Assembly (NCBI RefSeq): GCF_006345805.1
Contig: NC_043007.1
Location: 59,272,001-59,336,000 of the forward strand
Source of the DNA: Octopus sinensis
Taxonomy: Eukaryota
Direction of reading: 5' to 3'
DNA: 64,000 nucleotides
Each line of letters opens with the position of its first letter. Position 1 is the stretch's first letter. Shown one piece after another: positions 3,184 to 54,673 of the stretch. The translations under genes were made by a program, and so were the position numbers. The notes beneath the pieces were generated by a model. That model saw only the letters and a list, made by a program, of their open reading frames with translations. It was not told where the DNA came from and ran no database searches.

Positions 3184-3659
3184 GATATAGGTCTTATATT
3201 CGTCCTAAAAAACTTTCCTGTCACACACTCACGCACACGCATGCACACACACACACACACGCACCCTCACACGCACGCACACACACACACGCACCCTCAC
3301 ACACACGCACGTTAGCTTACAATTTTATTTATATATTTGCGTGTCTATGTGTGTAAAGAGAAAGTGGCAGACTGAAAGAGTCACTCACTACAAAAGGTGA
3401 ATTACTTTCATTTTATTCTTTGCACACTGTGTGTGTGCGTGTGGTGGAACCACATTAAGAAAAGCATTGACATACACACCAGAATGTGAGTTTTCTGTAA
3501 ATTTTGCTTAATTGGAGTTTAAATTTTAAAAAGTGGACCTGGCAAACCCGATGCATTCTACTCTAAAAATGCTAAGTAAATGTAATTGAAGAAATCCTAT
3601 ATTGTAGATTCTATAACTGACAAAGGGAGGCAGATAAAATCTGCCTTTTATAATAAGAG

Positions 3660-3830
3660 ATTATATATATACACATATATATATACACATATATATATAC
3701 ACATATATATATATACATATATCTATACACATATATATATACACATATATATATACATACATATATATATATACACACACACATATATATATAAGCACAT
3801 ACATATATATATACACACACACATATATAT

Positions 3831-3867
<37 letters not shown>

Positions 3868-3870
3868 CGT
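3660..3870. repeat. (TA/CA)n microsatellite
   Basis: Directly visible. Confidence 0.95.
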
Positions 3871-4019
3871 TTAAATATTTGTTGTGCAAGACTTTTTATG
3901 TGAAGTCGTGTGTTGAAACAGATATTGTTGTATTTAGGAATGGTCATATATACACACATATACATACATACACATATATAAATATAGAAAAACAGAGATG
4001 TGAAATGGTACAAAATGTG

Positions 4020-6572: not shown

Positions 6573-6757
6573 AATCATCATCATCATTTAATGTCCGCTT
6601 TCCATGCTAGCATAGGTTGGACGGTTCATCTGGGGTCTGGGAAGCCAGAAGGCTGCACCAGGCCCGGTTTGATCTGGCAATGTTTCTACGGCTGGATGCC
6701 CTTTCTAACGCCAACCACTCCATGAGTGTACTGGGTGCTTTTTACGTGCCACCGGCA
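6573..6757 (-). mobile_element. SINE-like repeat with (CAT)n/(GAT)n tail
   Basis: Near-identical to 10024-10205. Confidence 0.8.
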
Positions 6758-7080
6758 TGAATGTATATATATATATATGTATGTATATATTTATATATGC
6801 ATGTATGCATATATGTATATATGTATGTATATATATATATGTATGTATATATATATATGTATGTATATATATATATGCATGTATGTGTATATATGTATGT
6901 ATATATATATGCATGTATGTGTATATATGTATGTATATATGCATGTATGTGTATATATGTATATATATATGTATGTATTTATATATGTATGTATATATCG
7001 TTTAGCGTCCGTTTTCCATGCTAGCATGGGTTATGTATACATGTATGTATATATATATATGTATATATATTGTATGTATG

Positions 7081-7119
<39 letters not shown>

Positions 7120-7932
7120 ATATATATATATGTATGTATATATATAATATAATATATATATATGTATGTATGTATATGTATATATATATATATGTATGTA
7201 TATATATATATATATGTATGTATATGTATATATATATATATATGTATGTATATATATATATATATGTATGTATATGTATATATATATATATGTATGTATA
7301 TGTATATATATATGTATGTATATGTATATATATATATGTATGTATATGTATGTATGTATATGTATGTATATGTATGTATGTATATGTATATATATATATA
7401 TGTATGTATATGTATATATTATATATGTATGTATATGTATATATATATATATGTATGTATATGTATATATATATATGTATGTATATATGTATTATGTATA
7501 TGTATGTATGTATATGTATATATATGTATGTATATGTATATATATATATGTATGTATATGTATATATATATATATATGTATGTATATGTATATATATATG
7601 TATGTATATATATATATATATATATGTATGTATATATATATATATGTATGTATATATATATGTATGTATATATATTTATTTTTTAAATTTTATCTGGTGT
7701 TGCTACATGATTTTACTTCACGAATGCATTTTAGCAACTGCTATTTGGTGCATGAGAGAGTTCGATATATGTATGTATGTATATATATATGTTTGTGTGT
7801 ATGTATGTATGTATGTATGTGTATGTATGTATATATATGTATGTACATATATATATGTATGTACATATACGTATGTATGTATGTATATGTGTGTATGTAT
7901 ATATGTATGTACATATACGTATGTATGTATAT

Positions 7933-7966
<34 letters not shown>

Positions 7967-8485
7967 GTATGTATATATATATGTGTATGTATGTATATGT
8001 ATGTATGTATATATATATATATGTGTATGTATATATATATGTATATATATATATATATGTATATATGTTATGTATGTATGTAGTATATGTATGTAGTATA
8101 TATATATATGGTGTATGTATATATATATATATGTATTATATATATTATATATATATTATATATGTATATATATGTACGTATATATACGTATATATGTGTA
8201 TATGTATGTGTGTATATATGTATGTGTATATATGTGTATATATGTATAGAAATGTATACATATATGCGTGTATATATGTATGTATATATATATATATGTG
8301 TGTGTATATATGTATATATGTGTATATATATGCATATATGTATATATATACACATGTATATATATATATATGTATGTGTATATATATATGCATATATGTA
8401 TATATATATACACATGTATATATATATATGTATGTGTATATATATGCATTTATGTATATATATGCATGTATATATATATATGTAT
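6758..8485. repeat. ~1.7-kb (TA)n/(TATG)n compound microsatellite with two small non-repeat islands
   Basis: Directly visible; islands at ~6998-7031 (SINE piece) and ~7675-7765. Confidence 0.97.
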
Positions 8486-9750
8486 AGCTCCTACAACACT
8501 ATAACTGGGTGTTAAAACAGCTACTAAATGGCTCAAATGTGGATGTAATATATCTCGTCTTTGCAAAATCCTTTGATAAAGTCGACCACGGTATGATTTG
8601 TCACAAACTGCGTGGTCTCGGCATAGGCGGAAAACTTCGAGAGTGGCTGCACAACTTCCTAAAAGATAGAAGACAGGTAGTTGTGACCAATGGAGCCACC
8701 TCCCAGGAAGCACAAGTAATGACCGGTGTTCCACAGGACACTGGTCTTGCGGCCACTGCTGTTCATAGTGGCCCTTTCAGACATGCCCTCAGTTGCTACG
8801 ATGGCCACCCTTGCTAGCTATGCAAATGACACAAAAGTCTCCCACACAATACAAAACCCTGAAAATATTGCGCATCTGCAACAGGAGTTGGATACAATAT
8901 ACAGGTGGGCTGAGGACAACAACATGCAGTCTAATGCAGTTAAGTTCCAGGCCCTACGCTACTGGCACACAAAGGTAAACGACGTGCAGACTGGATGCAC
9001 TGGCCCAGGAAGAATTGCAATCCCTGAGTCAAAATCAGTGCGTGACCTGGGCAATGACATGAGCAATGATTCATCTTTCCAAGTGCATATTACTAATCTG
9101 GTGATAAAATGCAGACAGCTAGCTGGATGGATTCTCCGAACTTTCAGAACAAGAGAGAAGGAGACACTGATGGTCCTCTGGAAAACACTCGTCCTCAGCC
9201 GCTTGAACTACTGCTCCCAACTATGGTCACCACACAATATAAAACTAACAGCAGAACTCAAAGCAATTCAAAGAAGCTACACAAAGAAGATCGTCTCAAT
9301 GCAAAATATCAGCTACTGGGAAAGACTGAAAGTATTAAACCTCTTCTCCCTAGAACGAAGGCGGGAGAGATATGCGGTGATATACATCTGGAAAATCCTG
9401 GAGGGTCTTGTCCCAAACTTTGGCATTCAAAGTTACCCCAACCGCAGAACGGGGCGCCACTGCATGGTGTCAAAGATTCCAACATCACCATCAAAATACA
9501 GGTCCAGATACTGCAACAGCTTGGGTTTCAGAGGATCACAGCTCTTTAACATCCTCCCTGAATGCCTGAGAGACTTGCATGGTGTGGATGTGAGTTTCTT
9601 TAAAACTAAACTGGATCTCTTCTTGTCAGGGGTCCCAGATGAACCTACCTCATGACATGGGACACAGATGCGGGCAGCGGCATCGAACTCCCTTGTTGAT
9701 CAAGTGACACGTATCAGAGGTGTATTCACATATTAGTGTAGCTCATTTTT
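8486..9750 (+). mobile_element. 5'-truncated CR1/L2-clan LINE (RT C-terminal half), inactive
   Basis: VDVIYLVFAKSFDKVDH, GVPQ.T-VLRPLLF (frameshift ~8750), YANDT in place of YADD, LNYCSQLWSP, LFSLERRRER; TGA at 9653 precedes the RAAASNSL tail motif. Confidence 0.9.
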
Positions 9751-14060: not shown

Positions 14061-14265
14061 TACGGAGTTCTAGTCTTTATAACTATGGAAAAGCAGTCAG
14101 AAAGATAGACATTGTTGTGAAGAAATGATTTCGTTGGAGGTCTGTCATCTCCATTCTAGCCCCTGATGGCCGAGAAGAGATTACAAGGGTCAAGTGGCAA
14201 ATACATTCTGCTTAGCGAAGGCATCTGGGAAATGTATAACTTCTGCCATTCACAGAAAAACTATT

Positions 14266-15108
14266 GTCAAGATTAGTACCGGGTCTGTGGAAACTATCAT
14301 TCATGACCAATTGCATATGCAAAAGGTGCCTGCCAGATGGATTCCCAGGTTGCTTACACCTTTCCAGAAGCAAGAACGTGTCGAGTGCTCGAGGATGAAT
14401 TTGGAGATGTGCCAAGAAGATGAGTCAAAATTTTTCAAAAGACTGATTACACAGGATGAAACCTGGGTCCAACACTATGATCCAGAGACCAAAGCCCAGT
14501 CAATGCAGTGGAAGCACCGTGACTCACCTCCTCCAAAGAAGGCAAGGGTGCAGGCCTCCACTGGCAAGGTCATGCTCACAGTCTTCTGGGACCAGGACGG
14601 AGTAGTGATGACAGATTTCCTGACAAAGGGTACCACAATTACAGGAGCCTATTATGCTTCACTTTTGAGGAAATTAAGAGAAGCTATCAAAATCAAGAGG
14701 CGGGGCAAGATCAACAAAGGCATCCTCCTCCTGCAGGACGACGCTCCGGTCCACAACTCGCGTGTCACCAGATCAGAAGCACAGGCGTGCGGCTATGAAC
14801 TCTCCCCCATCCCACCTACTTTCCTGACCTTGCACCCTCTGATTTTCACCTCTTCCCAGCCATGAAGTTGTTTTTTAAAGGAAAGCGTTTCCCAGATGAT
14901 GCAGTCTTGATTTCTGAAGTCACGTCGTGGTTGGTGGACCAGACTGGGGTCTTCTACAAAAACGGTCTCCAGAGCTGCATCAAATGATGGGAGAAATGCG
15001 TAACTCTGGGTGGTTCCTATGTAGAAAAAAACTAATAACTGTTTCAAGTTTCGTTGCTCTACTGCTATGGGAAGTGGGTCAGGGGCATTACTTATTGAAT
15101 GCCCCTCG
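14266..15108 (+). mobile_element. 5'-truncated mariner (DD34D family) copy
   Basis: WIPRLLT, TQDETW and QDDAP motifs; intact right TIR ...CATTACTTATTGAATGCCCCTCG|TA; ~94% identical to 30293-31584 over a 200-nt stretch aligned by eye. Confidence 0.93.
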
Positions 15109-22292: not shown

Positions 22293-22347
22293 GAAGACTT
22301 ATTAATCAACTTGGTCATCGAGCAGATGATCAATGATACGGATCCAG
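22293..22347 (+). CDS. PPP4R3: PPP4R3 exon e (55 nt, 0-1)
   Basis: EDLLINLVIEQMINDTDP; |gtaaga. Confidence 0.95.
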
Positions 22348-22977
22348 GTAAGATCACTTTATAAAATTCTTTATATTTATTGCTTTAGTTATTAAAGTTT
22401 CTTAATGATTTGTATTGCCTCTGATGTTCAGTTTGTTGCCTTCCCCCCCACCCCTGCCTCCAAATAAATCCATATTTTAATTTTTGCTTAGTCAGTAAAT
22501 TTTTCTGCATGTGTATACGTTTTAGCATATTTTATTAGTACAGTGTAGAAGTTTTATGTGTACGTATGTTGCATGCTACAGTTCAGTTGCTATTATATAT
22601 TTTTGTGGTGGTTTCACATCATGATTTAAAATGACAATCTGAGAAATTTTTTTTATATTCATGGCTCTCTACCAAAAATTCAAAAATATTTTTAATATGA
22701 TGATTATAATTTCATACAGTTTCTAGGCAAAAATTGTGCAAGTGGTTTTGTCAGTTAAAGAAGCAGGATATTAATCAGTTAGATTATATTTCTGACTCCT
22801 AGATAGATAATCTGAATTAACAGAACATTGTAAAAATGGAACTTTTCTTCAAGGAAGTATTTGTATTGTTCCTATTTGTGATTCTAATGTTATGAAGGCT
22901 TGTCCTTCATCTTACTCTTTTTTTAAAGCTAGAAGTAATGTTTAGTTATTGATAGTAAGATTCCTTTGTTATTGTAT

Positions 22978-23205
22978 GGCTAGGTGAGCTGGCAGAATCG
23001 TTATTACACCGGGCGAAATGCTTAGCGGTATTTCGTCTGTCACTACGTTCTGAGTTCAAATTCCGCTGAGGTTGACTTTGCCTTTCATCCTTTCAGGGTT
23101 GATTGAATAAGTACCAGTTATTCGATGTAATTGACTTAATCCCATTGTCCTTGTTTGTCCCCTCTATGATTAGCTCCTTGTGGGCAATAAAGAAATAAAT
23201 ATTTT
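22978..23205 (+). mobile_element. SINE (GGTGAGCTGGCAGAATCG family)
   Basis: Box B-like GAGTTCAAATTCC and AATAAAGAAATAA tail; a related copy lies at ~58255-58450 (-). Confidence 0.7.
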
Positions 23206-24702
23206 AAATTAACTTTTCCCCACTTAGCACCTAACAAAACCTTACAGTGGATATTTGCCTTGGCTGTATATGTAGGTTAATGATTTTCTTGTACAAATTC
23301 TTTGTAGTGCTCAATACTTTAGAAGTGTAACAATATTTTATAATTAAAAGAACAAAAGCAAGAGTTAACTTAAAATTTTTACACATTCAAATCAACTTGC
23401 AAAACATGTAGCATTCACTTAACCATTTTAACAAGATCTTGCAAATGGATGAATGATGGTTAAGATGAATTGAGCTACTGTGTCAGTTTTCTAACAACAA
23501 CTAAGAAACAATCCTGCTCTGTTGGCCTTCCAGAGCTTGTTGCATCTTTTGTACTGCTATTACAGTCTTTGATGTTTTGAGAACATATTTTCTCAAAGCA
23601 GAATATTTTTGCCATGAAAACCCCTGTGTTTTGTATAGCTTTAATAAAATTGTTACCATCTCTTAATTAAAAGATAAAAAAACAAAAATATTGGTTATAA
23701 TAGATCTTTCTTTAGACAACTCTATCAGAAGATTTAAGCTTAGATAAAACAAAAAAGAAAATTGTAGACAACAGTGTCCCTTCTCTTTCCTATTTGAACT
23801 ATAAGTGATAAATTTGTTGAAAACTTTTCTCAAAGAAAATTTATCTGATTTTGGAATAATTTGAACACTTTTATGCTCATGAACATGTGTTCTTTTTTCT
23901 GTTTAAGATTTTAACCAACTTCTTTGGTTATTATTTACTTTTGGATTTCAGTATTTGTTTATGCCTTAGATTAAATTTATATGGAGTAAAGTGATTAACA
24001 TAAATTCTAGTTGAAATTTTATTAATACAGTAGTTTACTGAAACTTTATTATTTGCATTTATTAACTGGAATTATTGGTTAGGTAACATTTCTAATTAGA
24101 CCTTAAATCACAAAATTTACCTCTATTGGATATTTCAGAGAATTCATGATTACAAGAAATAAAAAAATCATTGTGCGCATAAGGCTTTAATATAAATTTT
24201 CTAATCTCTCTCTCTCTCTCCATCTCTCCTTCACACACACACACACACACACAAAGTTTGTTAACTGAAATTTTCTATTTATTAAACTGCTCTCTTTTTG
24301 ATTGGCAATAAATCTGAAAGTAGCTGGTTTCTTTTCACTTTATATTTTGTTTTACTTAGAATATTAGTGAATCTGTTTTAGATCATTGGTATTGAACAAT
24401 ATTTGTCTTCTGAGAATGTCTTGGTTTATAAAAACAAAGTTTTGATTTAAAGATATGAAATTATATATTTCTGATTTGTTATTCTACTGTTCTTATCTCT
24501 CTTGTAGTTGATTTGGTTTAATTTTGAGTAGGTTTTATAAAAGAAGAAAAAGACAGCCTTTAGTGTTGGTACTTGCTTTTTTATCCATGGTTAATGTAGG
24601 CTAGTTCATGTGTTTAATGTTTTTTCTTTTCTTTCTTTCCTCTTGTTGGTTAACTTTTATTTGTCCAAGATTGAGATATTTCCTCTGTTCATTCGCTCAT
24701 AG

Positions 24703-24771
24703 AATTGAAAAGAAAGAGATGTCTCAAGAGTTCACGCCAGCCGTTAGATCATTTGTTGGTCAGTAGATGGG
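24703..24771 (+). CDS. PPP4R3: Candidate alternative cassette exon of PPP4R3 (69 nt, phase 1-1)
   Basis: tttcctctgttcattcgctcatag|AATTG...TGGG|gtaaga; open in the gene frame as (E)LKRKRCLKSSRQPLDHLLVSRW(E); no expression evidence. Confidence 0.5.
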
Positions 24772-25652
24772 GTAAGATGATCGATCTTTTCAATGTATAT
24801 GATTTTCTTACTTTATTTTGGTAGATTTCTTGATGTTTCCATAGAGATTCCTTTTGTACTTTTAGCTGGTTCTTAACAGATCTCAGTAAAGTCTTCTTCA
24901 GTGATGGCTGTTTAGAAATACTCAAAATTGTATATTTTATTATATGTTGAGGTTATTTAAGTAGTTGATTATTTTGTTAATTTAGACAGTAATAGAAAAA
25001 AATTCAGTGTAGTTCCTTAGTGCATGCAGTTCTTTACAATGACTTATTTATTTATCTTAGTTTTTATTTTATTTTAATTTTAACCAACACTGGGCTGCTG
25101 ATTTAATACTTTCATATTTAATGATTACTTGTGAAATAAGATGTTTAATTTCAACAACCTATAAAAATGATATAAATTGTATTCAAATAATGAAAATTCT
25201 ATTAAATAACAAGAAAATTTATTGAAATTAGTTAATGAATAATACTTTTCAAAATAGGCTTGAGAACTTTAGAATAAGTTATATGAAATGTAATTAAAAT
25301 GTGATCTCACATTATTTATTTGAACTTGATATTGATGGAAACTGTACATTAGCTTTAGAAACTGATAATCTATTTCACATACTTTGATACATTATTGAAA
25401 CCTGAATAAAATTTGATTTAAATTGTTATTTTTTACTCTAGCAATACTTTATATCAGAAGTCTTTAATATATGACTTGAAAATAAAGTGAAGTGTAATAT
25501 TCCATCATAGAATGTGTTGAACTATTGACTTATAATCAATAAGCTGATACACCTGCTGATAACATTATTACACTGTTTGACATGATATAATTGCTTGTCT
25601 CAGACTAGCAGGAAATAAGTCCGATTTGAAATTTATTGGCATGCAGCTTTAG

Positions 25653-25869
25653 CCCTTAAGCACTCAGATTATCCTGTCAAATGTAATACTTATTTATTTG
25701 CATTGTTTTGAATTAATCATGCATTATCTTGAAGCTTTGAGACTTTGATGATCTGATTGTTTTTATAATGACATTGTAAGGTAGGTGTAAGAGGCCAGAT
25801 CTAGTTTGTCTGAACATAGAACCAAGTAAAATATTTGGGCTGAATATAGCCAGTTTAAATGCTAAAGGG
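25653..25869. mobile_element. piggyBac-like MITE (CCCTT..AAGGG|TTAA)
   Basis: Right end AATGCTAAAGGG|TTAA; inverted relative to the copy at 55964-56178; partial copies at ~27780-27940 and ~55600-55820. Confidence 0.7.
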
Positions 25870-27081
25870 TTAAAAAAATCTAATTATTCTGATGCATGCA
25901 GTTATGTAAATTTTTTTAGTCCCACACTACCAAATCTCATAAACCAACAAAACTTGACTAAGTTTGTTCTGCTATTACTACCACACTTACTCAGTCAATC
26001 CATTTGGGTAAATGCTCGTAATGTTTCACCCTTTTCCAATTATGACCAAGTTTTCTGGTTCTTTTGCCATGGAAGTTTCTCCCTACCTTTCTGTAGTCTC
26101 AGTTCTGAGAAATTTCAAAGTAGTGTCAGTAATCAGTTATTTTATTGGCCATATACATTAAATGTCACCTTGGACATTTTTCTCACACAAATTCAATTCT
26201 CTTTTTTTAGATACTTCACTAAGTATGATCACCATAGATATTAAATTACTAAGTATCTAAAGAGTAATCCTTCCAATTTCTCTATCATGAGACAAATTTG
26301 CTCAACTATGTTGTCTACTCCACAATAAGAGAAATGAATATGTCCAAGATGACAGAAATAATTGTATGTAATTACTTATAATAGTATCTTTGCTTGTCCT
26401 GCATTCAATTATAAAATCTGCAATATAGAATCAAGCTTAGAATCATCAGAAATGTCATTTCATTTTCTGCTCTTGTTAACAAAATTTTATGATTGTGTGT
26501 GTGGATGTACACACATACACACATATATACATAGATACATGTTAGACTTCTGGCAAAGTTGTTTATTAATGGGCTCCACTCACTTGATTTATCACTGAAA
26601 TTGCAGCTTGTTAGTGATCCCCATCTCGCCACTCATTCAGCTTGCTTCACTAGACCTTTTAGAATTATTTTTCTACTTCTTGTCTTCTTTTTTTTCTCAC
26701 TAGCATATAACAATTCCATCTATGCTGATTCAGTAATCTGTAAAAGGCCGCTAAGATCTGTGAACTGCAGTCTTCCTTCTTGACTATTTTCTGTGATAAT
26801 GAGAAAGAGACCGATGTTCTTTTTCTTTTTTTCTTCTATTGCAACATGAATAGTATGAAATTTACAAATTTTAAAATTATTTCATGTATTGTTCATTGAA
26901 ACCTCTGAATGTCAACTCTCCACCTCAGACACATTAAATATACTATTAGAGTTGTTTGCAAATAAATTTTGTTAGGGAAAAATAGTTGTATAAATTTTGG
27001 AGGTTGTCTTCTCTCACTTTTTACATTCTGTTTTCTTATTGCATTTCTTTTTATTATTTCTATAATATAATTATTACTTTG

Positions 27082-27660
27082 TGAAGTATATTTGCCACCT
27101 AAATGTGGCTGACCCATATGGGACGCTGTTACTGTTGTTTATAACCCCAGGAAGATGATGGAACAATGATTTCCTTTCGCAAATACTGATCAGACTCAGT
27201 GTGTTGTTAGCCAGCTGGAGGAGATGTCTTCCTGGGGCTATAAACAACTGTAGTATCGTCCCATATGGGTCAGCCACATTTAGGTGGCAAATATACTTCA
27301 TGATGTTGTGCTGCTACTGTTTACATCTCATTCAGTGATTTATTATTTCTTGTTTCTCCTGTTTTGAGATCAGCAATGGTTTGTCACTGGAAAAAGCATA
27401 TAGTATTTTGCATTTAGAATCGGTTCTCATCCCTAGCTGGTGATTGTCACAGAAACCCGGTCCATGTGTATCACATAAGGCTAGAGGTGAGAACGATGAT
27501 TTCCCTTCGCAAATACTGATTGGACACAGACAGTGTGTAGTTATCCAACTGGAGATGTCTTCCTGGGGCTATAAACAACAGTAGCATCGTCCCATATGGG
27601 TCAGCCACATTTAGGTGGCAAATATACTTCATGATGTCATGCTGCTACTGTTTACATCTT
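27082..27660. repeat. Inverted repeat (27082-27300) plus direct duplication of its right part (~27490-27660)
   Basis: 44-nt perfect arm TGAAGTATATTTGCCACCTAAATGTGGCTGACCCATATGGGACG, extending to ~72 nt with a few mismatches; the right arm occurs twice. Confidence 0.92.
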
Positions 27661-28135
27661 GCTGAGAGATTTATTATTGATAATTATTACTCTTTCAACT
27701 GTAATTTTCAGAATTTTTGTTTGATTTCTAAGCATTTTGAATCTTGCTTAGATGTTTTGTATTAATATTTTGATATTAAAGCTTTAGCATTTAAATTGGC
27801 CATATACAGCCCAAATATTTTACTTGTTTTATGTTCAAACTAAGCAGATCCAGCCCCTCACACCCCACAATGTCATTGTAAAAATAATCAGTCACATCAT
27901 CAGAATCTTAAAGCTATAATCTGAATGCTAAAAGGTTATGTGAGCATTTCAGAGTAATATTTTACTGCTCAATCTCTCTGAATTATAATGAAGTATATTA
28001 AAAATGTAGAAGTTCTGTAAGAGTTATTACAGGTTTTTTTATTTAAAATTTTTTTCTTAATTTTAAAAACTGTTGTTGACACAAAAACCTTGTTAAATGG
28101 TCTTTTTTGTATTGAAAATAAATTTTCTTTTTTAG

Positions 28136-28212
28136 AATTGGGTGGCGCAATGCAGTTGATGGCTATCATAAGACTATTGATTGATCCTGAGAATATGCTT
28201 GCCACAGCCAAT
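28136..28212 (+). CDS. PPP4R3: PPP4R3 exon f (77 nt, 1-0)
   Basis: (E)[25 protein letters not shown]; tttag|...|gtatgt. Confidence 0.96.
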
Positions 28213-28899: not shown

Positions 28900-30270
28900 T
28901 CAGTTCGCTATTTCAGATATTAAAGGATGTGCAGATATGTTTAATAGCTAGATCAGAAGGAAGAGACGGTGCCTATAGCATGTGAAGCTATGGCACTGCC
29001 TCTTCTTAAGTCGTCCAGTGTTGATAAGATTGATACTGTTAACATTCTGTTTAAACTGTTGCAAGCTGATGATTGCAGATGCAGACATTTACAAGGAGGA
29101 AATTCCAGAGGGCTGATATTTTAGAAAGAAATGACTGAGCAGAGTAGTTAATGTAGAGTCTGGAGTATCGATTATTTAAAAAAAAATTTATTATTGAGTG
29201 AAAACAAGATTGACAGGAAGTCATGGGAGGATGTTGCTGTGACCTGTTTTCATGTAATCAGTGCAGATTTTGCATTCAGTTGTTTTGGGTATTGTAGGTT
29301 AAAAAGAATGAAGAGTGGTTGTGTAAAGAGTGCTTGTTGTTAGATGTTTTGGTAAGTAACTGATGTATAACAGGAAAGCTGTGACATACCAGAGTAGATA
29401 GTTGGGTCAAAGAGACTATTCCATGAGCACAGATCATGGTAGGCCAATCTCATGGGAAACTACTGGTCCATGAGATGAAAGGCAGCTGAAGCCCATAGTT
29501 AGGCAATTTTAAATGCAACATAGTCAAAAAGTTTGCCGATGTTGAGGGCAACAATTCTGTCACTAATTTTCATTAGCTCAGGAGCACATTGGTGAGTGAT
29601 GTATGGGAGTAGTTTTGCAATAGATCTAGCTTTATGAAAGCTGTACTGGTAGTCATTAAGGAGAGATTGATTGATTTGTGGTGTTGAATAGTATTGTTAA
29701 TGGTGGTCTCTGTTGCTTTTTAATTGAGAAGTAAATGTGATAGAAGTTGGAGGGGTTGCACTTCTTGGGAATTAGAGATACTGTATTGCATTTCCAAAAA
29801 TTAAGATGTATCCTTGTTAAGAGAGAGAATCAAGAGTTTAATGAGGGTACAGTGAAGGCAATGGAAGAGACATTCTCATGGCTAGTGATCTTGGTTTGAA
29901 TTAACTGGAGGCACTTTTATACTTCATATGTATGTGTGATGGTGGTGTGAAAGTGGGTAGATTTGGAGGGATTTACTCACATGCAACTTGAGGGTAGATT
30001 CAAAGAGAGCAGCAAAGCTGGTTGTTTTTTCTGTGGGAGTACTGGGTAGAAAATCACTATGGTTGAAGACTTTGGCAAATCACTAAAAGGATCAGCTGCA
30101 GTTAAGGAGGTGGGGGAGCTGTTCAGTGCACTAAGACATCCTTTGTAGTTTGGATGATTGCCTTGTATGAATTGTGGTGCATTTGTAGAGATGGATAGTT
30201 CTCTTCAGTTGCTGGAGATCATGTTTTTAACCTGAACAGCTGTAGCACAGCTATGAATAAATCATTAGGG
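28900..30270 (-). mobile_element. Heavily decayed CR1/L2-type LINE RT
   Basis: Minus-strand remnants RIVALNIGKLFDYV (VALDISKAFDRV-like), NSLFDPTIL/FLLYISYLP and LWNFL; boundaries approximate. Confidence 0.6.
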
Positions 30271-30292: not shown

Positions 30293-31584
30293 CGAGGGGC
30301 GTTCAATAAGTAATGCCCCTGACCCACTTCCCATAGCAGTGGAGCAACGAAACTTGAAACAGTTACTAGTCTTTTTCTACATAGGAACCACCCAGAGTTA
30401 CGTATTTCTCCCATCGTTTGATGCAGCTCTGAAGACCGTTTTTGTAGAAGACCCCAGCTTGGTCCTCCAACCACGACGTGACTTCAGAAATCAAGGCTGC
30501 ATCATCTGGGAAACGCTTTCCTTTAAAAAACAACTTCATGGCTGGGAAGAGGTGAAAATCAGAGGGTGCAAGGTCAGGAGAGTAGGGGGGATGGGAGATG
30601 AGTTCATAGCCGCACGCCTGTGCTTCTGATCTGGTGACACGCGAGTTGTGGATCGGAGCGTTGTCCTGCAGGAGGAGGATGCCTTTGCTGATCTTGCCCC
30701 GCCTCTTGATTTTGATAGCTTCTCTTAATTTCCTCAAAAGTGAAGCATAATAGACTCCTGTAATTGTGGCACCCTTTGCCAGGAAATCTGTCTTCACTAC
30801 TCCGTCCTGGTCCCAGAAGACTCTAAGCATGACCTTGCCAGCGGAGGGCTGCACCCTTGCCTTCTTTGGAGGAGGTGAGTCACTGTGCTTCCACTGCATT
30901 GACTGGGCTTTGGTCTCTGGATCATAGTGACGGACCCAGGTTTTATCCTATGCAATCAGTCTTTTGAAAAATTTTGACTCATCTTCTTGGCACATCTCCA
31001 AATTCATCCTCGAGCAATCGACGCGTTCTTGCTTCTGGAAAGGTGTGAGCAACCTTGGAATCCATCTGGCAGACACCTTTTTCATATGCAAATGGTCATG
31101 AATGATAGTTTCCACAGACCCGGTACTAATCTTGACCTCATGGGCTATTTGGCGAATAGTTATGCGGCGATCTTCCAAAATGGCAGCCTCAACTTGACAG
31201 ACAGATGCCTCATCAATGGCAGAAGGGGGTGACCAGATCTGGGAGCTGTTTCCACAGAGTTCCGACCATGTTTGAATTCACGATGCCAGCGTTTTACAAG
31301 GTCATATGATGGGGCATCATCACCATAAGTTACTTTCATTTCATCAAAAGTCTCCCGTGGTGTGCGTCCTTTCAAATACAAAAACCGGATCACTGCTCGA
31401 CACTCAACATGCTCCATTTCACACTTGACTCAGTTCAAACACCTGTAAATCGGAAACCACAATTAGTTCAGAGCTGTAATTTGCCACTTAATCTATAGAG
31501 ATATAAATAGTTGCACATGCAAAATTTCAGCTATATCAAACAACTGCAAGTGGGTCAGGGGCATTACTTATTGAACGCCCCTCG
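30293..31584 (-). mobile_element. Full-length (1292 bp) mariner, DD34D transposase pseudogene
   Basis: Perfect 37-bp TIRs CGAGGGGCGTTCAATAAGTAATGCCCCTGACCCACTT and TA TSDs; ORF 31417-30366 broken by one frameshift (~31230) and one TAG (30948); WIPRLLT and YSPDLAPSD, 34 aa between D2 and D3. Confidence 0.97.
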
Positions 31585-41229: not shown

Positions 41230-42869
41230 GTAAATATTTCAAATGAATTCATTAAAAAAATTTTTTTTTGATCTATTCAGTTTAAATATTAAATAAATGC
41301 AATAAGTATCTTTATCTGAGTGACTCCAAAAATTTGTGCAGTTTTCTTGTGTTTGGACTAAATGCTGCTTTTCTTATTAAGCAGTCAACTGCAAGTATTA
41401 CTGCAATCAACAAGAAGTAACACTTTTGTTACTGTATTTATAACCCAGATACAACCCTTGTGTGTTTCAATTAAATTCTAAAATAATCGTGAATTTAGAC
41501 TGGTTTCATAAAACAACTTTTTATTTTTCAACATGTTTGTGATTTTTTGAATTAAAGGTTATAAGTAAATTCAACAAAATATAAAATCAATAACATTTTT
41601 TGCTTAAACATCAGCTTAGAAAATGAGTTATTAGTTAAGTTATACAACAAAATTTTCATGCAGAAAGTGTTTAAAATACTGGATATCTATCAGTCAAATG
41701 TAATGCACATGAGACAGGAGTACCTTAACGGTACAGAATGAAATACTGAAATTAACTAAATGAAATGAACTCACACATACATAAATACACAGAAACACAC
41801 ATAATAATGATTCTCAATACAAATTAATCAAAATTTGTCACACATCTTACAGATAACTTTAAAATAAGAATGAGGTAAATTTGAAAAAATATGTATAAAT
41901 CAAACACACACACACACACCAACCAACCAACTAACCAACAATTTCTAAAGATGCTCACATCTTTCTTCCAAGTATGTGGAAAAACTATCTCGTTTTCATC
42001 TTCATTTATGTTTTGTGTAACGGTTCATTTCTGCAGTAATCATTTCAAAAGGGAAAGTGAAAAATAAAAATCTAAGTTTTGTTTCCTTAGAAAAACTGTG
42101 GCTATGTCTAATATTGTCCTAAAAATAACCGAGGTGCAGACCCCCCCCCCCCACTTATTATTGCTATTGGGACTGTTGTCTGATTGTTTTACTTTCAGAA
42201 AACAAATATCTGATTTATAATCACATGTGGCTTTTATGTTAGCCATATATTTTCTCTGATTATTCAGAGAATTCAACCCACTGCTTGACAACATGAAACT
42301 GGTATCCAGTTTTCATTCATAGTGAATGAAACTTTTCTGAAAATCAAAGTGGGAGAAACGGAAAAAAATCTCCAAAAATTTGTAGCACTTGGATATCATG
42401 TAAAATAATGTTGGACAGTATAGCTCAATTGTTTACATAATGAAATCATGTGTTTTCCTGAATGTACTAATGAGATTTGTGCTAAACTTCTCACTTTCAA
42501 CCATTTTAGTAAAATTTGCCAATAAAATTCTCAGCTGGCTACAACTGTCTTGGTATTGAAAGGGTTAAATGAACTAAAATTACTGCAACTGTTGTTTGCT
42601 CACTCCAGCTATACATTAATATTTATTTATTACTACTTACTAATGGTGTAGTGTACTATGACTTAGTCAGGTTTTCAGTCTGTTGATAGGGGGCCATCTT
42701 ATTTATTGTAGGTTTGCTTGAAGACCAAATTATGTGATCTAACAAAATGTTTGTCAGTTACACTCTGCTCAGGTTGCTTTTTTTCTTTTAGCTTATTTAT
42801 ATAATATAGAAGGATTAAGACTACTTGTACAAAATTGGTGTATTTTGCTTATTGTTTTTGTTTTTTCAG

Positions 42870-43060
42870 CATGCCATCTATCCTTCGTAACAGCCGTTTC
42901 CGTCGTGATGAACGAGCACTTGATGAAGAGGAAGACATGTACTTTAATCAAGATGATGATCTTGATGATGGAGAGAGTATTGTTCCTATGGGAGACATCT
43001 TAAAGAATAAGCTGGATCCAGACTTTGATCAGATCAGTCGGTTTATTGAAAATAAAAGAG
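42870..43060 (+). CDS. PPP4R3: PPP4R3 exon k (191 nt, 2-1)
   Basis: MPSILRNSRFRRDERALDEEEDMYFN...RFIENKR. Confidence 0.95.
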
Positions 43061-43689
43061 GTAAAAAGCAATTATTTTGTGGGTGCTTGTGTGAACACAT
43101 GTTAGGTGGCTCGTGTTATTAATTTTCAAAACTGGAGAATTTAGTAGAACCAACAAACAATAAGGTGGATATAGAAAACAATTTAAAAACAAGATATTTG
43201 TAAAATTATTTGTTTTAATCACAAAAAAAGTAAACTTCGGTTTTTTTTTTTTTTTATAATCCTAATATAAAATGGGTTAATATTTATTAGCAAAAGAAGC
43301 AGAACTGTTAGGTCAATGGAATAGTTGTGTCCATTATTGGATTTTAAATTTAACATAAAAGTATGACACTGTGTAATCCACTTTTTGTTCTTAGGTAGTA
43401 AGTGTTTGTTGATAATTGTGTTACGAAAGGTTATTACTTCCTTTAAACATTGATTTTGTGACTTGAATAATGTTATTTCAAAATTTATCTATTTCATATC
43501 AAGAAACAGGTGAATTTGCACTTTTTCATTCACATAAAGTTATCAAAAGCAACAACATAAATTTAAGCTGAACACAAAAATTTGGAGCTAATTTTTTTTA
43601 AAAAGATCTGTGAATTGCTTTCATGTGTAAGCCACCCACCACTAAATATAATCTGCAATCATGTTTCATTTACATATTCTTTGATAACA

Positions 43690-54277: not shown

Positions 54278-54673
54278 TTATTTTAAATTTTCTAAAATTT
54301 GCTCAACCATATCAAGTAGGTCATCTTTTTTCATAGAGTAATTACTTTCTTTCCAAATACATTTCAATTTGGAAATAATTTTCTGAAAAAGTGATCCTTT
54401 TGGAATATTGCGCGCTAGCAAATCATAGCCAGAAACAGGAAATTTCGGTGGATCCCAATGGTCAAAATTCTTTAATACTTCATGTTTACCATTGTATTTC
54501 AGTAGTTCTTTGATGTAAGATTTGATATTATGTTCTTTTCTGTCCATTAGTAACTGCTGACAATAGCTAATGGTATCATCTGTAGCGTTCAGTTTGTTTC
54601 GTTGCTGGATAATAAATGTCCCTTGTCGGAGCTCATCAGTTGAGATTTTTACACGACTTTGGAAATTCAACAG
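54278..54673 (-). CDS. TRNT1: Last coding exon of CCA tRNA nucleotidyltransferase 1
   Basis: ELLKYNG..W.PPKFPVSGYD...W.ESNYSMKKDDLL matches remembered human TRNT1 C-terminus (ELLKYQG..WSIPPFPVSGHD..WKKSGYQMEKDELL); acceptor ttcattacag|CTG; upstream exons not located. Confidence 0.85.
   Translation of the reverse strand: MLNFQSRVKISTDELRQGTFIIQQRNKLNATDDTISYCQQLLMDRKEHNIKSYIKELLKYNGKHEVLKNFDHWDPPKFPVSGYDLLARNIPKGSLFQKIISKLKCIWKESNYSMKKDDLLDMVEQILENLK

What the first reader, a model, noticed from the sequence alone, without database searches (positions are those of the whole stretch)
24703..24771. Hidden in-frame 69-nt cassette exon that would add a KRKR NLS-like motif to PPP4R3
Seen: inside the 5.8-kb phase-1 intron between DTDP and ELGG there is a pyrimidine tract + AG, 69 nt and a strong GG|GTAAGA donor. 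The segment is phase 1-1 and stop-free, and inserts ELKRKRCLKSSRQPLDHLLVSRW before ELGG. It begins with the same AATTG as the downstream constitutive exon. Known: KRKR fits the classical monopartite NLS consensus, and SMEK proteins already carry a C-terminal KRPRL signal. Inference: an alternatively spliced isoform, absent from the human sequence as I remember it, could change PP4 localisation or partner binding. It is too short for the ORF track.
Basis: partly seen in the sequence, partly recalled or inferred. Interest (0 to 1): 0.75.

Follow-up and report, generated by a model that had tools for sequence, protein, structure and literature searches.

The report
Annotated alternative exon in octopus PPP4R3A
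The 69-base segment is a genuine alternatively spliced exon of the octopus PP4 phosphatase regulatory subunit gene, conserved as far as the paper nautilus Argonauta. It is already in public gene models of three octopus species, and its proposed nuclear-import role is untested.

Summary
Window 24703-24771 is a 69-nt, phase 1-1, stop-free AG...GTAAGA segment inside the 5,788-nt intron that splits DTDP|ELGG of PPP4R3A. The window is Octopus sinensis.

Sequence alone does not make it significant. The acceptor is weak, and one equally good decoy exists in 32.7 kb of introns.

Two independent lines show the exon is real:
- **Annotation.** The exact peptide ELKRKRCLKSSRQPLDHLLVSRW is in annotated isoforms of O. 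sinensis (XP_029642673.1) and O. vulgaris. A D->N variant is in O. bimaculoides. Skipping isoforms sit beside all of them.
- **Conservation.** Against Argonauta hians, the only intronic stretch of the whole gene that still aligns in order is a 378-nt island around this exon. AG, GTAAGA and the frame are intact, and the flanks are 100% identical.

So it is a conserved, regulated cassette exon, but it is not hidden and not new.

AlphaFold2 places the 23 residues in a disordered loop between two HEAT/Arm helices.

The NLS reading remains inference:
- Every full-length isoform keeps the C-terminal KRPRL.
- All five substitutions seen are nonsynonymous, so conservation is not synonymous-biased.
- The KRKR codons are a polypurine run that can pair with the exon's own polypyrimidine tract.

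Decapodiform cephalopods could not be tested.

The parts
22293..22347 (+). Constitutive PPP4R3A exon encoding EDLLINLVIEQMINDTDP plus the first base of the next codon. Donor is CAG|gtaaga.
   Evidence: 100% match to residues 416-433 of XP_029642673.1.
22348..28135 (+). Phase-1 intron of 5,788 nt that hosts the cassette. Patella vulgata has an intron at the same position and phase (695 nt, no cassette). Vertebrates and several other animals have none.
24521..24898 (+). Conserved island. It is the only collinear block shared by O. sinensis and Argonauta hians in this gene that is not a constitutive exon. It extends 182 nt upstream and 127 nt downstream of the cassette. It is single copy and not a repeat.
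   Evidence: Substitution divergence to O. bimaculoides is 2.4%, against an intron mean of 5.2%.
24671..24727 (+). Predicted RNA stem-loop. UUGAGAUAUUUC (24671-24682) pairs with GAGAUGUCUCAA (24716-24727), with inner pairs beyond. It encloses the polypyrimidine tract, the AG and the first 25 nt of the exon, including the KRKR codons. This is inferred, not shown.
   Evidence: -20.2 kcal/mol, z -2.6 in Octopus; -19.5 kcal/mol, z -1.9 in Argonauta; 25 pairs, all invariant, no covariation.
24683..24702 (+). Weak 3' splice site: pyrimidine-rich tract ctctgttcattcgctcat plus AG at 24701-24702.
   Evidence: 0.2 bits against 9.9-17.3 for constitutive acceptors. AG conserved in four species.
24703..24771 (+). 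The 69-nt alternative cassette exon (phase 1-1) encoding (E)LKRKRCLKSSRQPLDHLLVSRW. These are residues 434-456 of O. sinensis isoform X1.
24708..24719 (+). AAA AGA AAG AGA = KRKR, an NLS-like basic motif. It is also a 12-nt polypurine run, so it could be an exonic splicing enhancer or a stem arm.
   Evidence: Invariant in four species.
24772..24777 (+). Strong 5' splice site, GGG|GTAAGA. The 36 nt downstream are identical in all four species.
   Evidence: (8.7 bits).
28136..28212 (+). Constitutive downstream exon encoding (E)[25 protein letters not shown].

Best explanation
Window 24703-24771 is a real, evolutionarily conserved alternative cassette exon of octopod PPP4R3A (SMEK1-like, regulatory subunit 3 of protein phosphatase 4). 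It is already present in public gene models.

Skipping joins 22347 to 28136 and gives the canonical protein. Inclusion joins 22347->24703 and 24771->28136. It inserts 23 residues with a net charge of about +5 (ELKRKRCLKSSRQPLDHLLVSRW).

In the AlphaFold2 model the insert is a disordered, exposed loop between two confidently predicted helices of the HEAT/Arm solenoid. That domain scaffolds the PP4 catalytic subunit.

Inclusion is most likely regulated rather than constitutive:
- The acceptor is far weaker than any constitutive acceptor of the gene, while the donor is strong.
- The flanking intron is more conserved than the exon itself. This is the classic signature of regulated alternative exons.

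A conserved stem that buries the polypyrimidine tract and AG against the exon's polypurine (KRKR-coding) run may be part of that control.

**Shown:** the exon's existence in annotations of three species, its conservation, and its predicted loop location.

**Inferred:** regulation through the flanks and stem, and any effect of the basic loop on nuclear import or on PP4c or partner binding.
For: **Annotation**
- The exact peptide is in XP_029642673.1 (O. sinensis X1) and in CAI9730194.1 and CAI9730195.1 (O. vulgaris).
- The D->N variant is in XP_052827673.1 and XP_052827674.1 and the older O. bimaculoides model (UniProt A0A0L8HPE6; named XP_014770672.1 by a second source).
- Matching skipping isoforms exist in each species.
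- One O. vulgaris model (684 aa) combines the cassette with read-through of a later intron. I read that as a transcript-derived model. That annotation took its alternative forms from PASA assemblies built on Iso-Seq and RNA-seq data (PMC10700109).

**Identity of the window**
- The window is 100% identical to O. sinensis CM016869.1.

**Conservation**
- Every collinear blastn hit between the O. sinensis gene and Argonauta hians is an exon, and the cassette island is among them with the longest flanks.
- AG, GTAAGA, frame and absence of stops are kept in Argonauta. About 45 nt upstream and 36 nt downstream are identical.
- Constitutive CDS has pS 0.245, yet the cassette shows 0 synonymous changes over 13 synonymous sites (P about 0.03).

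**Splice sites**
- Weak acceptor and strong donor.

**Structure**
- AlphaFold2 gives pLDDT below 50 for residues 433-457, between helices 419-429 and 459-472 at pLDDT of about 85.

**RNA stem**
- z is -2.6 in Octopus and -1.9 in Argonauta.

**Skipping at RNA level**
- An RNA-derived contig from another octopod shows the skip junction GATCCAG|AATTGGG.
Against: - I could not see junction reads. RNA support for inclusion rests on other groups' annotation pipelines.
- No assembled transcript contig in the protein collection contains the cassette. The five full-length cephalopod transcript proteins (P0034-37, P0162) all skip it. The short-query searches found no fragment with it, but their recall is limited.
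- Argonauta's single annotated isoform lacks it.
- The protein-level constraint is weak compared with the rest of the protein: pN is 0.068 against 0.0045.
- The stem has no covariation support, because all pairs are invariant.
- The second stem, at the donor, is lost in Argonauta.
Confidence: 0.85

Rival explanations
1. One reading: the cassette supplies a working classical monopartite NLS (KRKR), and this changes PP4 localisation.
For: - KRKR fits K-(K/R)-X-(K/R) and is invariant in four species.
- It sits in a predicted exposed, disordered loop.
- The motif is rare in translations of this gene's introns. It occurs in 1.0% of stop-free 23-aa windows, and four consecutive K/R in 0.4%.
- One O. 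vulgaris isoform has the cassette but lacks the C-terminal KRPRL through intron read-through. There the cassette would be the only NLS-like motif.
Against: - All full-length isoforms keep the C-terminal KRPRL.
- SMEK1/2 are reported to be nuclear in interphase, with the NLS in the unstructured C-terminus (PMC5414985, PMC12994818). An added NLS would therefore be largely redundant.
- The KRKR codons form a polypurine run that can pair with the upstream polypyrimidine tract. Their invariance may be an RNA-level constraint.
- Substitutions show no synonymous bias.
- From general knowledge, the motif has low specificity.
Confidence: 0.2
2. The island is conserved mainly as a non-coding element, such as an intronic enhancer or a structured RNA. 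Its use as an exon would be low-level splicing noise picked up by annotation pipelines.
For: - The flanks are more conserved than the exon, and synonymous sites are frozen while amino acids change.
- All assembled cephalopod transcripts skip the exon.
- The acceptor is weak.
Against: - AG, GTAAGA, the 3n length and the open frame are all retained in Argonauta.
- Four separate annotation sets in three species include it.
- No Rfam family matches the island.
- Conserved flanks are the expected signature of a regulated exon.
Confidence: 0.1
3. The inserted loop acts on the phosphatase complex rather than on import. It would modulate HEAT/Arm-mediated binding of PP4c, PPP4R2 or partners, or add a basic or phospho-regulated docking loop.
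For: - The insertion lies inside the HEAT/Arm domain. That domain is reported as the scaffold for PP4 assembly and for partner binding (PMC12994818).
- The loop is Ser- and basic-rich (KRKRCLKSSRQ).
Against: - No experimental structure of the PP4:SMEK interface exists. PDB holds only the EVH1 domain.
- The loop's position relative to the PP4c contact could not be evaluated.
Confidence: 0.2
4. A chance pseudo-exon with no biological meaning.
For: From this sequence alone, one equally good decoy (29298-29351) exists in 32.7 kb of introns, and 311 AGs match the acceptor score.
Against: - Annotated in three species.
- It lies in the only conserved intronic island shared with Argonauta. The decoy is not conserved.
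Confidence: 0.02

Closest known systems
Annotated cassette-containing PPP4R3A isoforms: O. sinensis X1 (XP_029642673.1), O. bimaculoides X1/X2 (XP_052827673.1, XP_052827674.1), O. vulgaris (CAI9730194.1, CAI9730195.1)
   Same: These contain the very same exon. The peptide is identical in O. sinensis and O. vulgaris and has one D->N change in O. bimaculoides.
   Different: Nothing differs. The finding rediscovers an existing computational annotation. No paper describing the exon turned up in the single full-text search on cephalopod cassette exons.
Vertebrate PPP4R3A/SMEK1 and PPP4R3B/SMEK2
   Same: - Same domain plan: EVH1, HEAT/Arm PP4R3 domain, and a disordered C-terminus ending in KRPRL.
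- 72-73% identity over the 500-aa query.
   Different: - No intron at DTDP|ELGG, because the exon is fused, so this cassette cannot exist there.
- None of 123 non-Octopus PPP4R3 proteins aligned has an insert at this point.
Conserved, regulated alternative cassette exons in general, where flanking-intron conservation is the hallmark (general knowledge from comparative work on mammalian alternative exons)
   Same: Length is a multiple of three, one splice site is weak, and there are more than 100 nt of conserved intron on both sides. The constitutive exons of the same gene have at most about 70 nt of conserved flank, and most have under 35 nt.
   Different: The depth of conservation is known only within Octopoda (Octopus and Argonauta). 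Inclusion levels and regulators are unknown.
Splice sites controlled by local RNA stems, for example the stem at the 5' splice site of human MAPT exon 10 (from memory)
   Same: A thermodynamically favoured, conserved stem encloses a splice site of an alternative exon.
   Different: Here it is the 3' splice site and polypyrimidine tract. The stem is only predicted, has no covariation support, and has marginal z-scores.

Membership tests
PPP4R3 / SMEK (host gene) | N-terminal EVH1_PP4R3 domain (PF22972) plus central PP4R3 domain (PF04802) | tested here: met
   Precomputed Pfam hits on the orthologous full-length proteins and loci. EVH1 matches PDB 4wsf and 6r8i at E of about 1e-66.
Alternative cassette exon | Both inclusion and skipping products documented | tested here: met
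   Both forms are annotated in O. sinensis, O. vulgaris and O. bimaculoides. The skip junction is seen in a Logan RNA contig. I did not see inclusion reads directly.
Alternative cassette exon | Frame-preserving (3n length, no stop) with functional AG and GT | tested here: met
   69 nt, phase 1-1, stop-free, AG and GTAAGA in four species.
Alternative cassette exon | Exon and flanking introns conserved across species | tested here: met
   The 378-nt island is conserved to Argonauta, with flanks identical over 36-45 nt.
Alternative cassette exon | Junction reads and tissue-regulated inclusion | not testable with these tools
   There is no read-level RNA-seq access. Transcript contigs in the collection all skip the exon.
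Classical monopartite NLS | K-(K/R)-X-(K/R) core | tested here: met
   KRKR at residues 436-439 of isoform X1. Invariant in four species.
Classical monopartite NLS | Surface-exposed, flexible context | tested here: met
   AlphaFold2 gives pLDDT below 50 for residues 433-457, a loop between two helices. This is a prediction only.
Classical monopartite NLS | Binds importin-alpha and is necessary or sufficient for nuclear import | not testable with these tools
   This needs reporter or binding assays.
   0 synonymous and 4 nonsynonymous changes against Argonauta, and 0 and 1 against O. bimaculoides. The cassette pN of 0.068 compares with 0.0045 in constitutive exons.
Poison (NMD-triggering) exon | Introduces a stop or a frameshift | tested here: not met
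   Open frame, 3n length.
Exonised transposable element | Exon lies in a repeated element | tested here: not met
   The island is single copy in the window and in the O. bimaculoides and Argonauta loci.
Known structured RNA (Rfam) | Match to a covariance model | tested here: not met
   No hit in the island at E<=1. The only hits in the intron are weak, sub-threshold ones elsewhere.

The most novel reading that the evidence does not exclude
The exon would be an octopod-wide regulatory innovation, possibly older. A conserved RNA stem that buries the weak 3' splice site would gate its inclusion. The product would give the PP4 regulatory subunit an internal basic loop that acts as a second NLS or a docking site. 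That would matter most in isoforms that lose the C-terminal NLS, such as the truncated O. vulgaris model.
Probability: 0.15. Interest if true: 0.45.

Novelty: already known. Interest (0 to 1): 0.25.

Why it matters
It shows that a reader working from raw sequence alone can correctly call a real 69-nt alternative exon. Biologically the exon is already in RefSeq, GenBank and UniProt models.

What this analysis adds is modest:
- The exon and about 300 nt of flanking intron are conserved between Octopus and Argonauta, where it is not annotated.
- The conservation acts at the RNA level rather than being synonymous-biased.
- A conserved stem may occlude the 3' splice site.
- The insert falls in a disordered loop of the HEAT/Arm scaffold.

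If the basic loop does alter PP4 targeting, this would be a lineage-restricted way of tuning a highly conserved phosphatase. Nothing here demonstrates that.

Tried and rejected
1. **Short-query searches for the cassette peptide.** I queried upstream exon + cassette + downstream exon against the 5.8-billion-protein index and the 1.84-billion representatives. Neither returned a protein with the cassette. These short-query searches also missed the full-length Octopus proteins that do contain it, so they have poor recall and are not evidence of absence. The cassette isoforms surfaced only when I listed cluster members.

2. **'The host intron is cephalopod-specific.'** I held this idea after and then rejected it. 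Patella vulgata has an intron at the same position and phase. Several other genomes show an ELGG exon that starts after unrelated sequence.

3. **Decapodiform check.** The ENA genomic locus L005 ends before the relevant intron. An anchor search with the preceding exon found no cephalopod genomic ORF. The question is unresolved.

4. **Pecten maximus locus.** It was not on record.

5. **Transposable-element origin.** Rejected, because the island is single copy.

6. **Rfam or ncRNA explanation.** No match.

7. **Donor-site hairpin (24765-24818).** It folds well in Octopus (z -2.6), but its 3' arm is deleted in Argonauta, so I did not count it as part of the feature.

8. **'AATTG shared with the downstream exon' as a clue to duplication.** Rejected, because Argonauta has AAATG.

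9. **PDB sequence and fold searches for the HEAT/Arm domain.** Only EVH1 structures and generic ARM/HEAT repeats came back. The loop could not be placed relative to the PP4c interface.

Full report
**1. What is at the coordinates**

The window's + strand carries most of a PPP4R3A (SMEK1-like) gene. I mapped thirteen coding exons. The exon at 22293-22347 ends ...DTDP plus one base, followed by gtaaga. The exon at 28136-28212 starts (E)LGG after ttttttag. The intron between them is 22348-28135, 5,788 nt, phase 1.

Inside that intron, 24701-24702 is an AG preceded by a moderately pyrimidine-rich tract. The 69 nt at 24703-24771 are open in the required phase, and GTAAGA follows. Spliced in, they add ELKRKRCLKSSRQPLDHLLVSRW and restore ELGG. 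The one correction is that the downstream exon ends at 28212.

**2. Is it more than chance?**

From this sequence alone, no. I built PWMs from this gene's own 13 acceptors and 12 donors.
- The donor scores 8.7 bits, which is good. Only 11 intronic GTs in 32.7 kb do as well.
- The acceptor scores 0.2 bits. Constitutive sites score 9.9-17.3 in-sample and 0.6-13.8 leave-one-out. 311 intronic AGs do as well.
- 39 AG..GT pairs of 27-300 nt reach both scores. Two of them preserve the frame without a stop: the cassette and a decoy at 29298-29351.

About 22% of 23-codon windows in these introns are stop-free.

**3. Independent evidence that it is real**

A search with the spliced protein returned Octopus PPP4R3A proteins at 100% identity. 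Listing the members of their 90% cluster and reading them gave these isoforms:

| Species | With cassette | Without cassette |
|---|---|---|
| O. sinensis | X1, XP_029642673.1, 855 aa | X2, 832 aa |
| O. vulgaris | CAI9730194.1, CAI9730195.1 | CAI9730193.1 |
| O. bimaculoides | X1/X2, XP_052827673.1 and XP_052827674.1; older model (UniProt A0A0L8HPE6) | X3/X4; A0A0L8HP72 |

O. sinensis X1 and the O. vulgaris models contain exactly ...DTDPELKRKRCLKSSRQPLDHLLVSRWELGG.... The O. bimaculoides models carry it with one D->N change.

The window is O. sinensis. The intron region is 100% identical to GCA_006345805.1 CM016869.1 and 99.5% identical to O. vulgaris.

The O. vulgaris annotation derived its alternative forms from PASA assemblies built on Iso-Seq and RNA-seq data (PMC10700109). 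One of its cassette-containing models (684 aa) also reads through the intron after 43060. I read that as a transcript-derived model.

So the exon is real with high probability. It is also already annotated, so it is not 'hidden'.

**4. Conservation**

I fetched the orthologous genes of O. bimaculoides (L001), O. vulgaris (L004) and Argonauta hians (L003).

Between O. sinensis and Argonauta the introns no longer align. Every collinear blastn hit across the gene is an exon. The one addition is window 24521-24898, which matches L003 16233-16620 at 78% over 404 columns. The decoy pseudo-exon has no counterpart there.

The four-species alignment shows the following for Argonauta:
- It keeps TCATAG|, |GTAAGA, the 69-nt length and an open frame (EMKRKRCLKSSRQPLSHLLLSRW).
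- About 45 nt upstream and 36 nt downstream are identical in all four species.
- The constitutive exons carry at most about 70 nt of conserved flank, and most carry under 35 nt.

Nei-Gojobori counts, O. sinensis against Argonauta:

| Region | Synonymous | Nonsynonymous |
|---|---|---|
| Constitutive CDS | pS 0.245 | pN 0.0045 |
| Cassette | 0 changes over 13.0 sites (P about 0.03 given pS) | 4 changes over 59.0 sites (pN 0.068) |

The single O. bimaculoides difference is also nonsynonymous. Conservation therefore acts largely at the nucleotide or RNA level. The peptide is less constrained than the rest of this very conserved protein.

Against O. bimaculoides the island diverges by 2.4%, and by 1.3% in the core 24600-24829. 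The intron mean is 5.2%.

**5. Phylogenetic extent**

- Of the 129 long PPP4R3 proteins retrieved from across Metazoa, only the six Octopus entries carry an insert at DTDP|ELGG.
- In vertebrates and several other animals the two flanking exons are fused, so there is no intron to host a cassette.
- The intron itself is not a cephalopod novelty. Patella vulgata has it at the same position and phase, 695 nt long, without any cassette homologue. Other genomes also show a separate ELGG exon.
- Full-length cephalopod transcript proteins from Logan assemblies (P0034-37, and P0162 from SRR3401912) all skip the exon.
- I could not reach the orthologous intron in any decapodiform genome.

**6. How it probably works**

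*RNA level.* The exon combines a weak acceptor, a strong donor, a 12-nt polypurine run (AAAAGAAAGAGA, which is the KRKR codons) and highly conserved flanks. That profile fits a regulated exon.

A predicted stem pairs UUGAGAUAUUUC (24671-24682) with GAGAUGUCUCAA (24716-24727), with further inner pairs. It encloses the polypyrimidine tract and the AG.
- Energy is -20.2 kcal/mol with z -2.6 in Octopus, and -19.5 kcal/mol with z -1.9 in Argonauta.
- All 25 pairs are invariant, so covariation cannot speak either way.
- The Argonauta changes in this stretch fall in the loop or a bulge.

This stem is an inference.

*Protein level.* AlphaFold2 on isoform X1 with 48 homologues places residues 433-457 at pLDDT below 50. 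They sit between helices 419-429 and 459-472, which score about 85. The insert is therefore a disordered loop on the HEAT/Arm solenoid.

Fold and sequence searches of the PDB find only the EVH1 domain and generic ARM/HEAT repeats. The HEAT/Arm domain is reported to scaffold PP4 assembly. The reported NLS lies in the unstructured C-terminus (PMC12994818). Smek1/2 are reported to be nuclear in interphase (PMC5414985).

All full-length octopus isoforms end in ...SSKRPRLAT.

**7. The NLS idea**

KRKR fits the monopartite consensus. It is invariant, is predicted to be exposed, and is not a trivial by-product of AT-rich sequence. K[KR]x[KR] occurs in 1.0% of stop-free intronic 23-mers.

Against the idea:
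- It is redundant with the constitutive C-terminal signal.
- Its codons double as a polypurine element and stem arm.
- There is no coding-type conservation signature.

I rate a real effect on localisation at about 0.2. An effect on complex or partner binding is about equally likely. Neither can be tested here.

**8. Verdict**

Novelty is 'already known', because the exon is present in public annotations of three species. The minor new points are the deep conservation to Argonauta, where it is unannotated, the RNA-level constraint, and a candidate splice-site stem. Interest is 0.25.

Noticed in passing
window 43509-43568 (+): Intact orthologue (GEFALFHSHKVIKSNNINLS) of a second, 60-nt alternative exon. 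That exon is annotated only in O. bimaculoides isoforms X1/X3, between ...ENKR and AKEQ.... It is not in the two O. sinensis isoforms retrieved and has no counterpart in Argonauta.
   Followed up: partly
window 29298-29351 (+): Decoy pseudo-exon: 54 nt, phase 0, stop-free, with acceptor 5.6 bits and donor 9.0 bits. On splice-site scores it is as good as or better than the real cassette. It is not annotated and not conserved in Argonauta.
   Followed up: yes
window 43061-43122 (+), ORF 42835-43122: Read-through of the intron after exon 42870-43060 gives ...ENKRGKKQLFCGCLCEHMLGGSCY*. This is exactly the C-terminus of the 684-aa O. vulgaris model CAI9730195.1. That isoform is either intron-retaining or alternatively terminated. 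It lacks the C-terminal KRPRL but contains the cassette.
   Followed up: partly
window 14194-14865 (+) and 30366-31417 (-): Two degenerate mariner/Mos1-type transposase remnants. One lies just upstream of the first exon mapped in the window and the other is in the intron after 28212. They match Pfam Transposase_1 at E 2e-25 and 3e-21, and HTH_48 at 7e-10.
   Followed up: yes
window 8509-9655 (+): Long ORFs that look like a reverse-transcriptase or non-LTR retrotransposon fragment. The 309-aa ORF gave no Pfam hit at E<=0.001.
   Followed up: partly
window ~900-1200, 3600-4000, 6700-8500: Extensive microsatellite-like arrays, apparently (TATG/CATA)n-type, that create long spurious ORFs rich in Y, I, C, M and V. 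There is also a 100-N assembly gap within about 306-740.
   Followed up: no
window 27082-27678: Internal direct duplication of about 190 nt (27161-27347 against 27491-27678, 87% identity), plus a 74-nt inverted match at 96%. Both lie inside the host intron.
   Followed up: no
window ~50947 onward (-), e.g. ORF 54278-54670: The neighbouring gene lies on the minus strand, tail to tail with PPP4R3A. It is called in the O. sinensis record with PolyA_pol and PolyA_pol_RNAbd domains, so it may be a CCA-adding or poly(A) polymerase-type enzyme.
   Followed up: no
whole PPP4R3A CDS in the window against L001: Synonymous divergence between O. sinensis and O. bimaculoides in this gene (pS 0.020) is less than half the substitution divergence of its intron (5.2%). 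This suggests constraint on synonymous sites of the constitutive exons too.
   Followed up: no
L004 (O. vulgaris models CAI9730193-5): All three O. vulgaris models start with an unrelated N-terminus (MMSSRRMHCISIFYDVNLYHRECLVEEAA) and lack the EVH1 domain. This is either an alternative promoter or a mis-annotated 5' end.
   Followed up: no
P0220 and P0241 (other animals, species unknown): Other lineages show small differences at the same DTDP|ELGG point. One has a 3-aa insert (DSDPSKAELGG) within a fused exon. Another ORF reads through a short His/Tyr-rich intron. The site looks like a tolerant loop.
   Followed up: no
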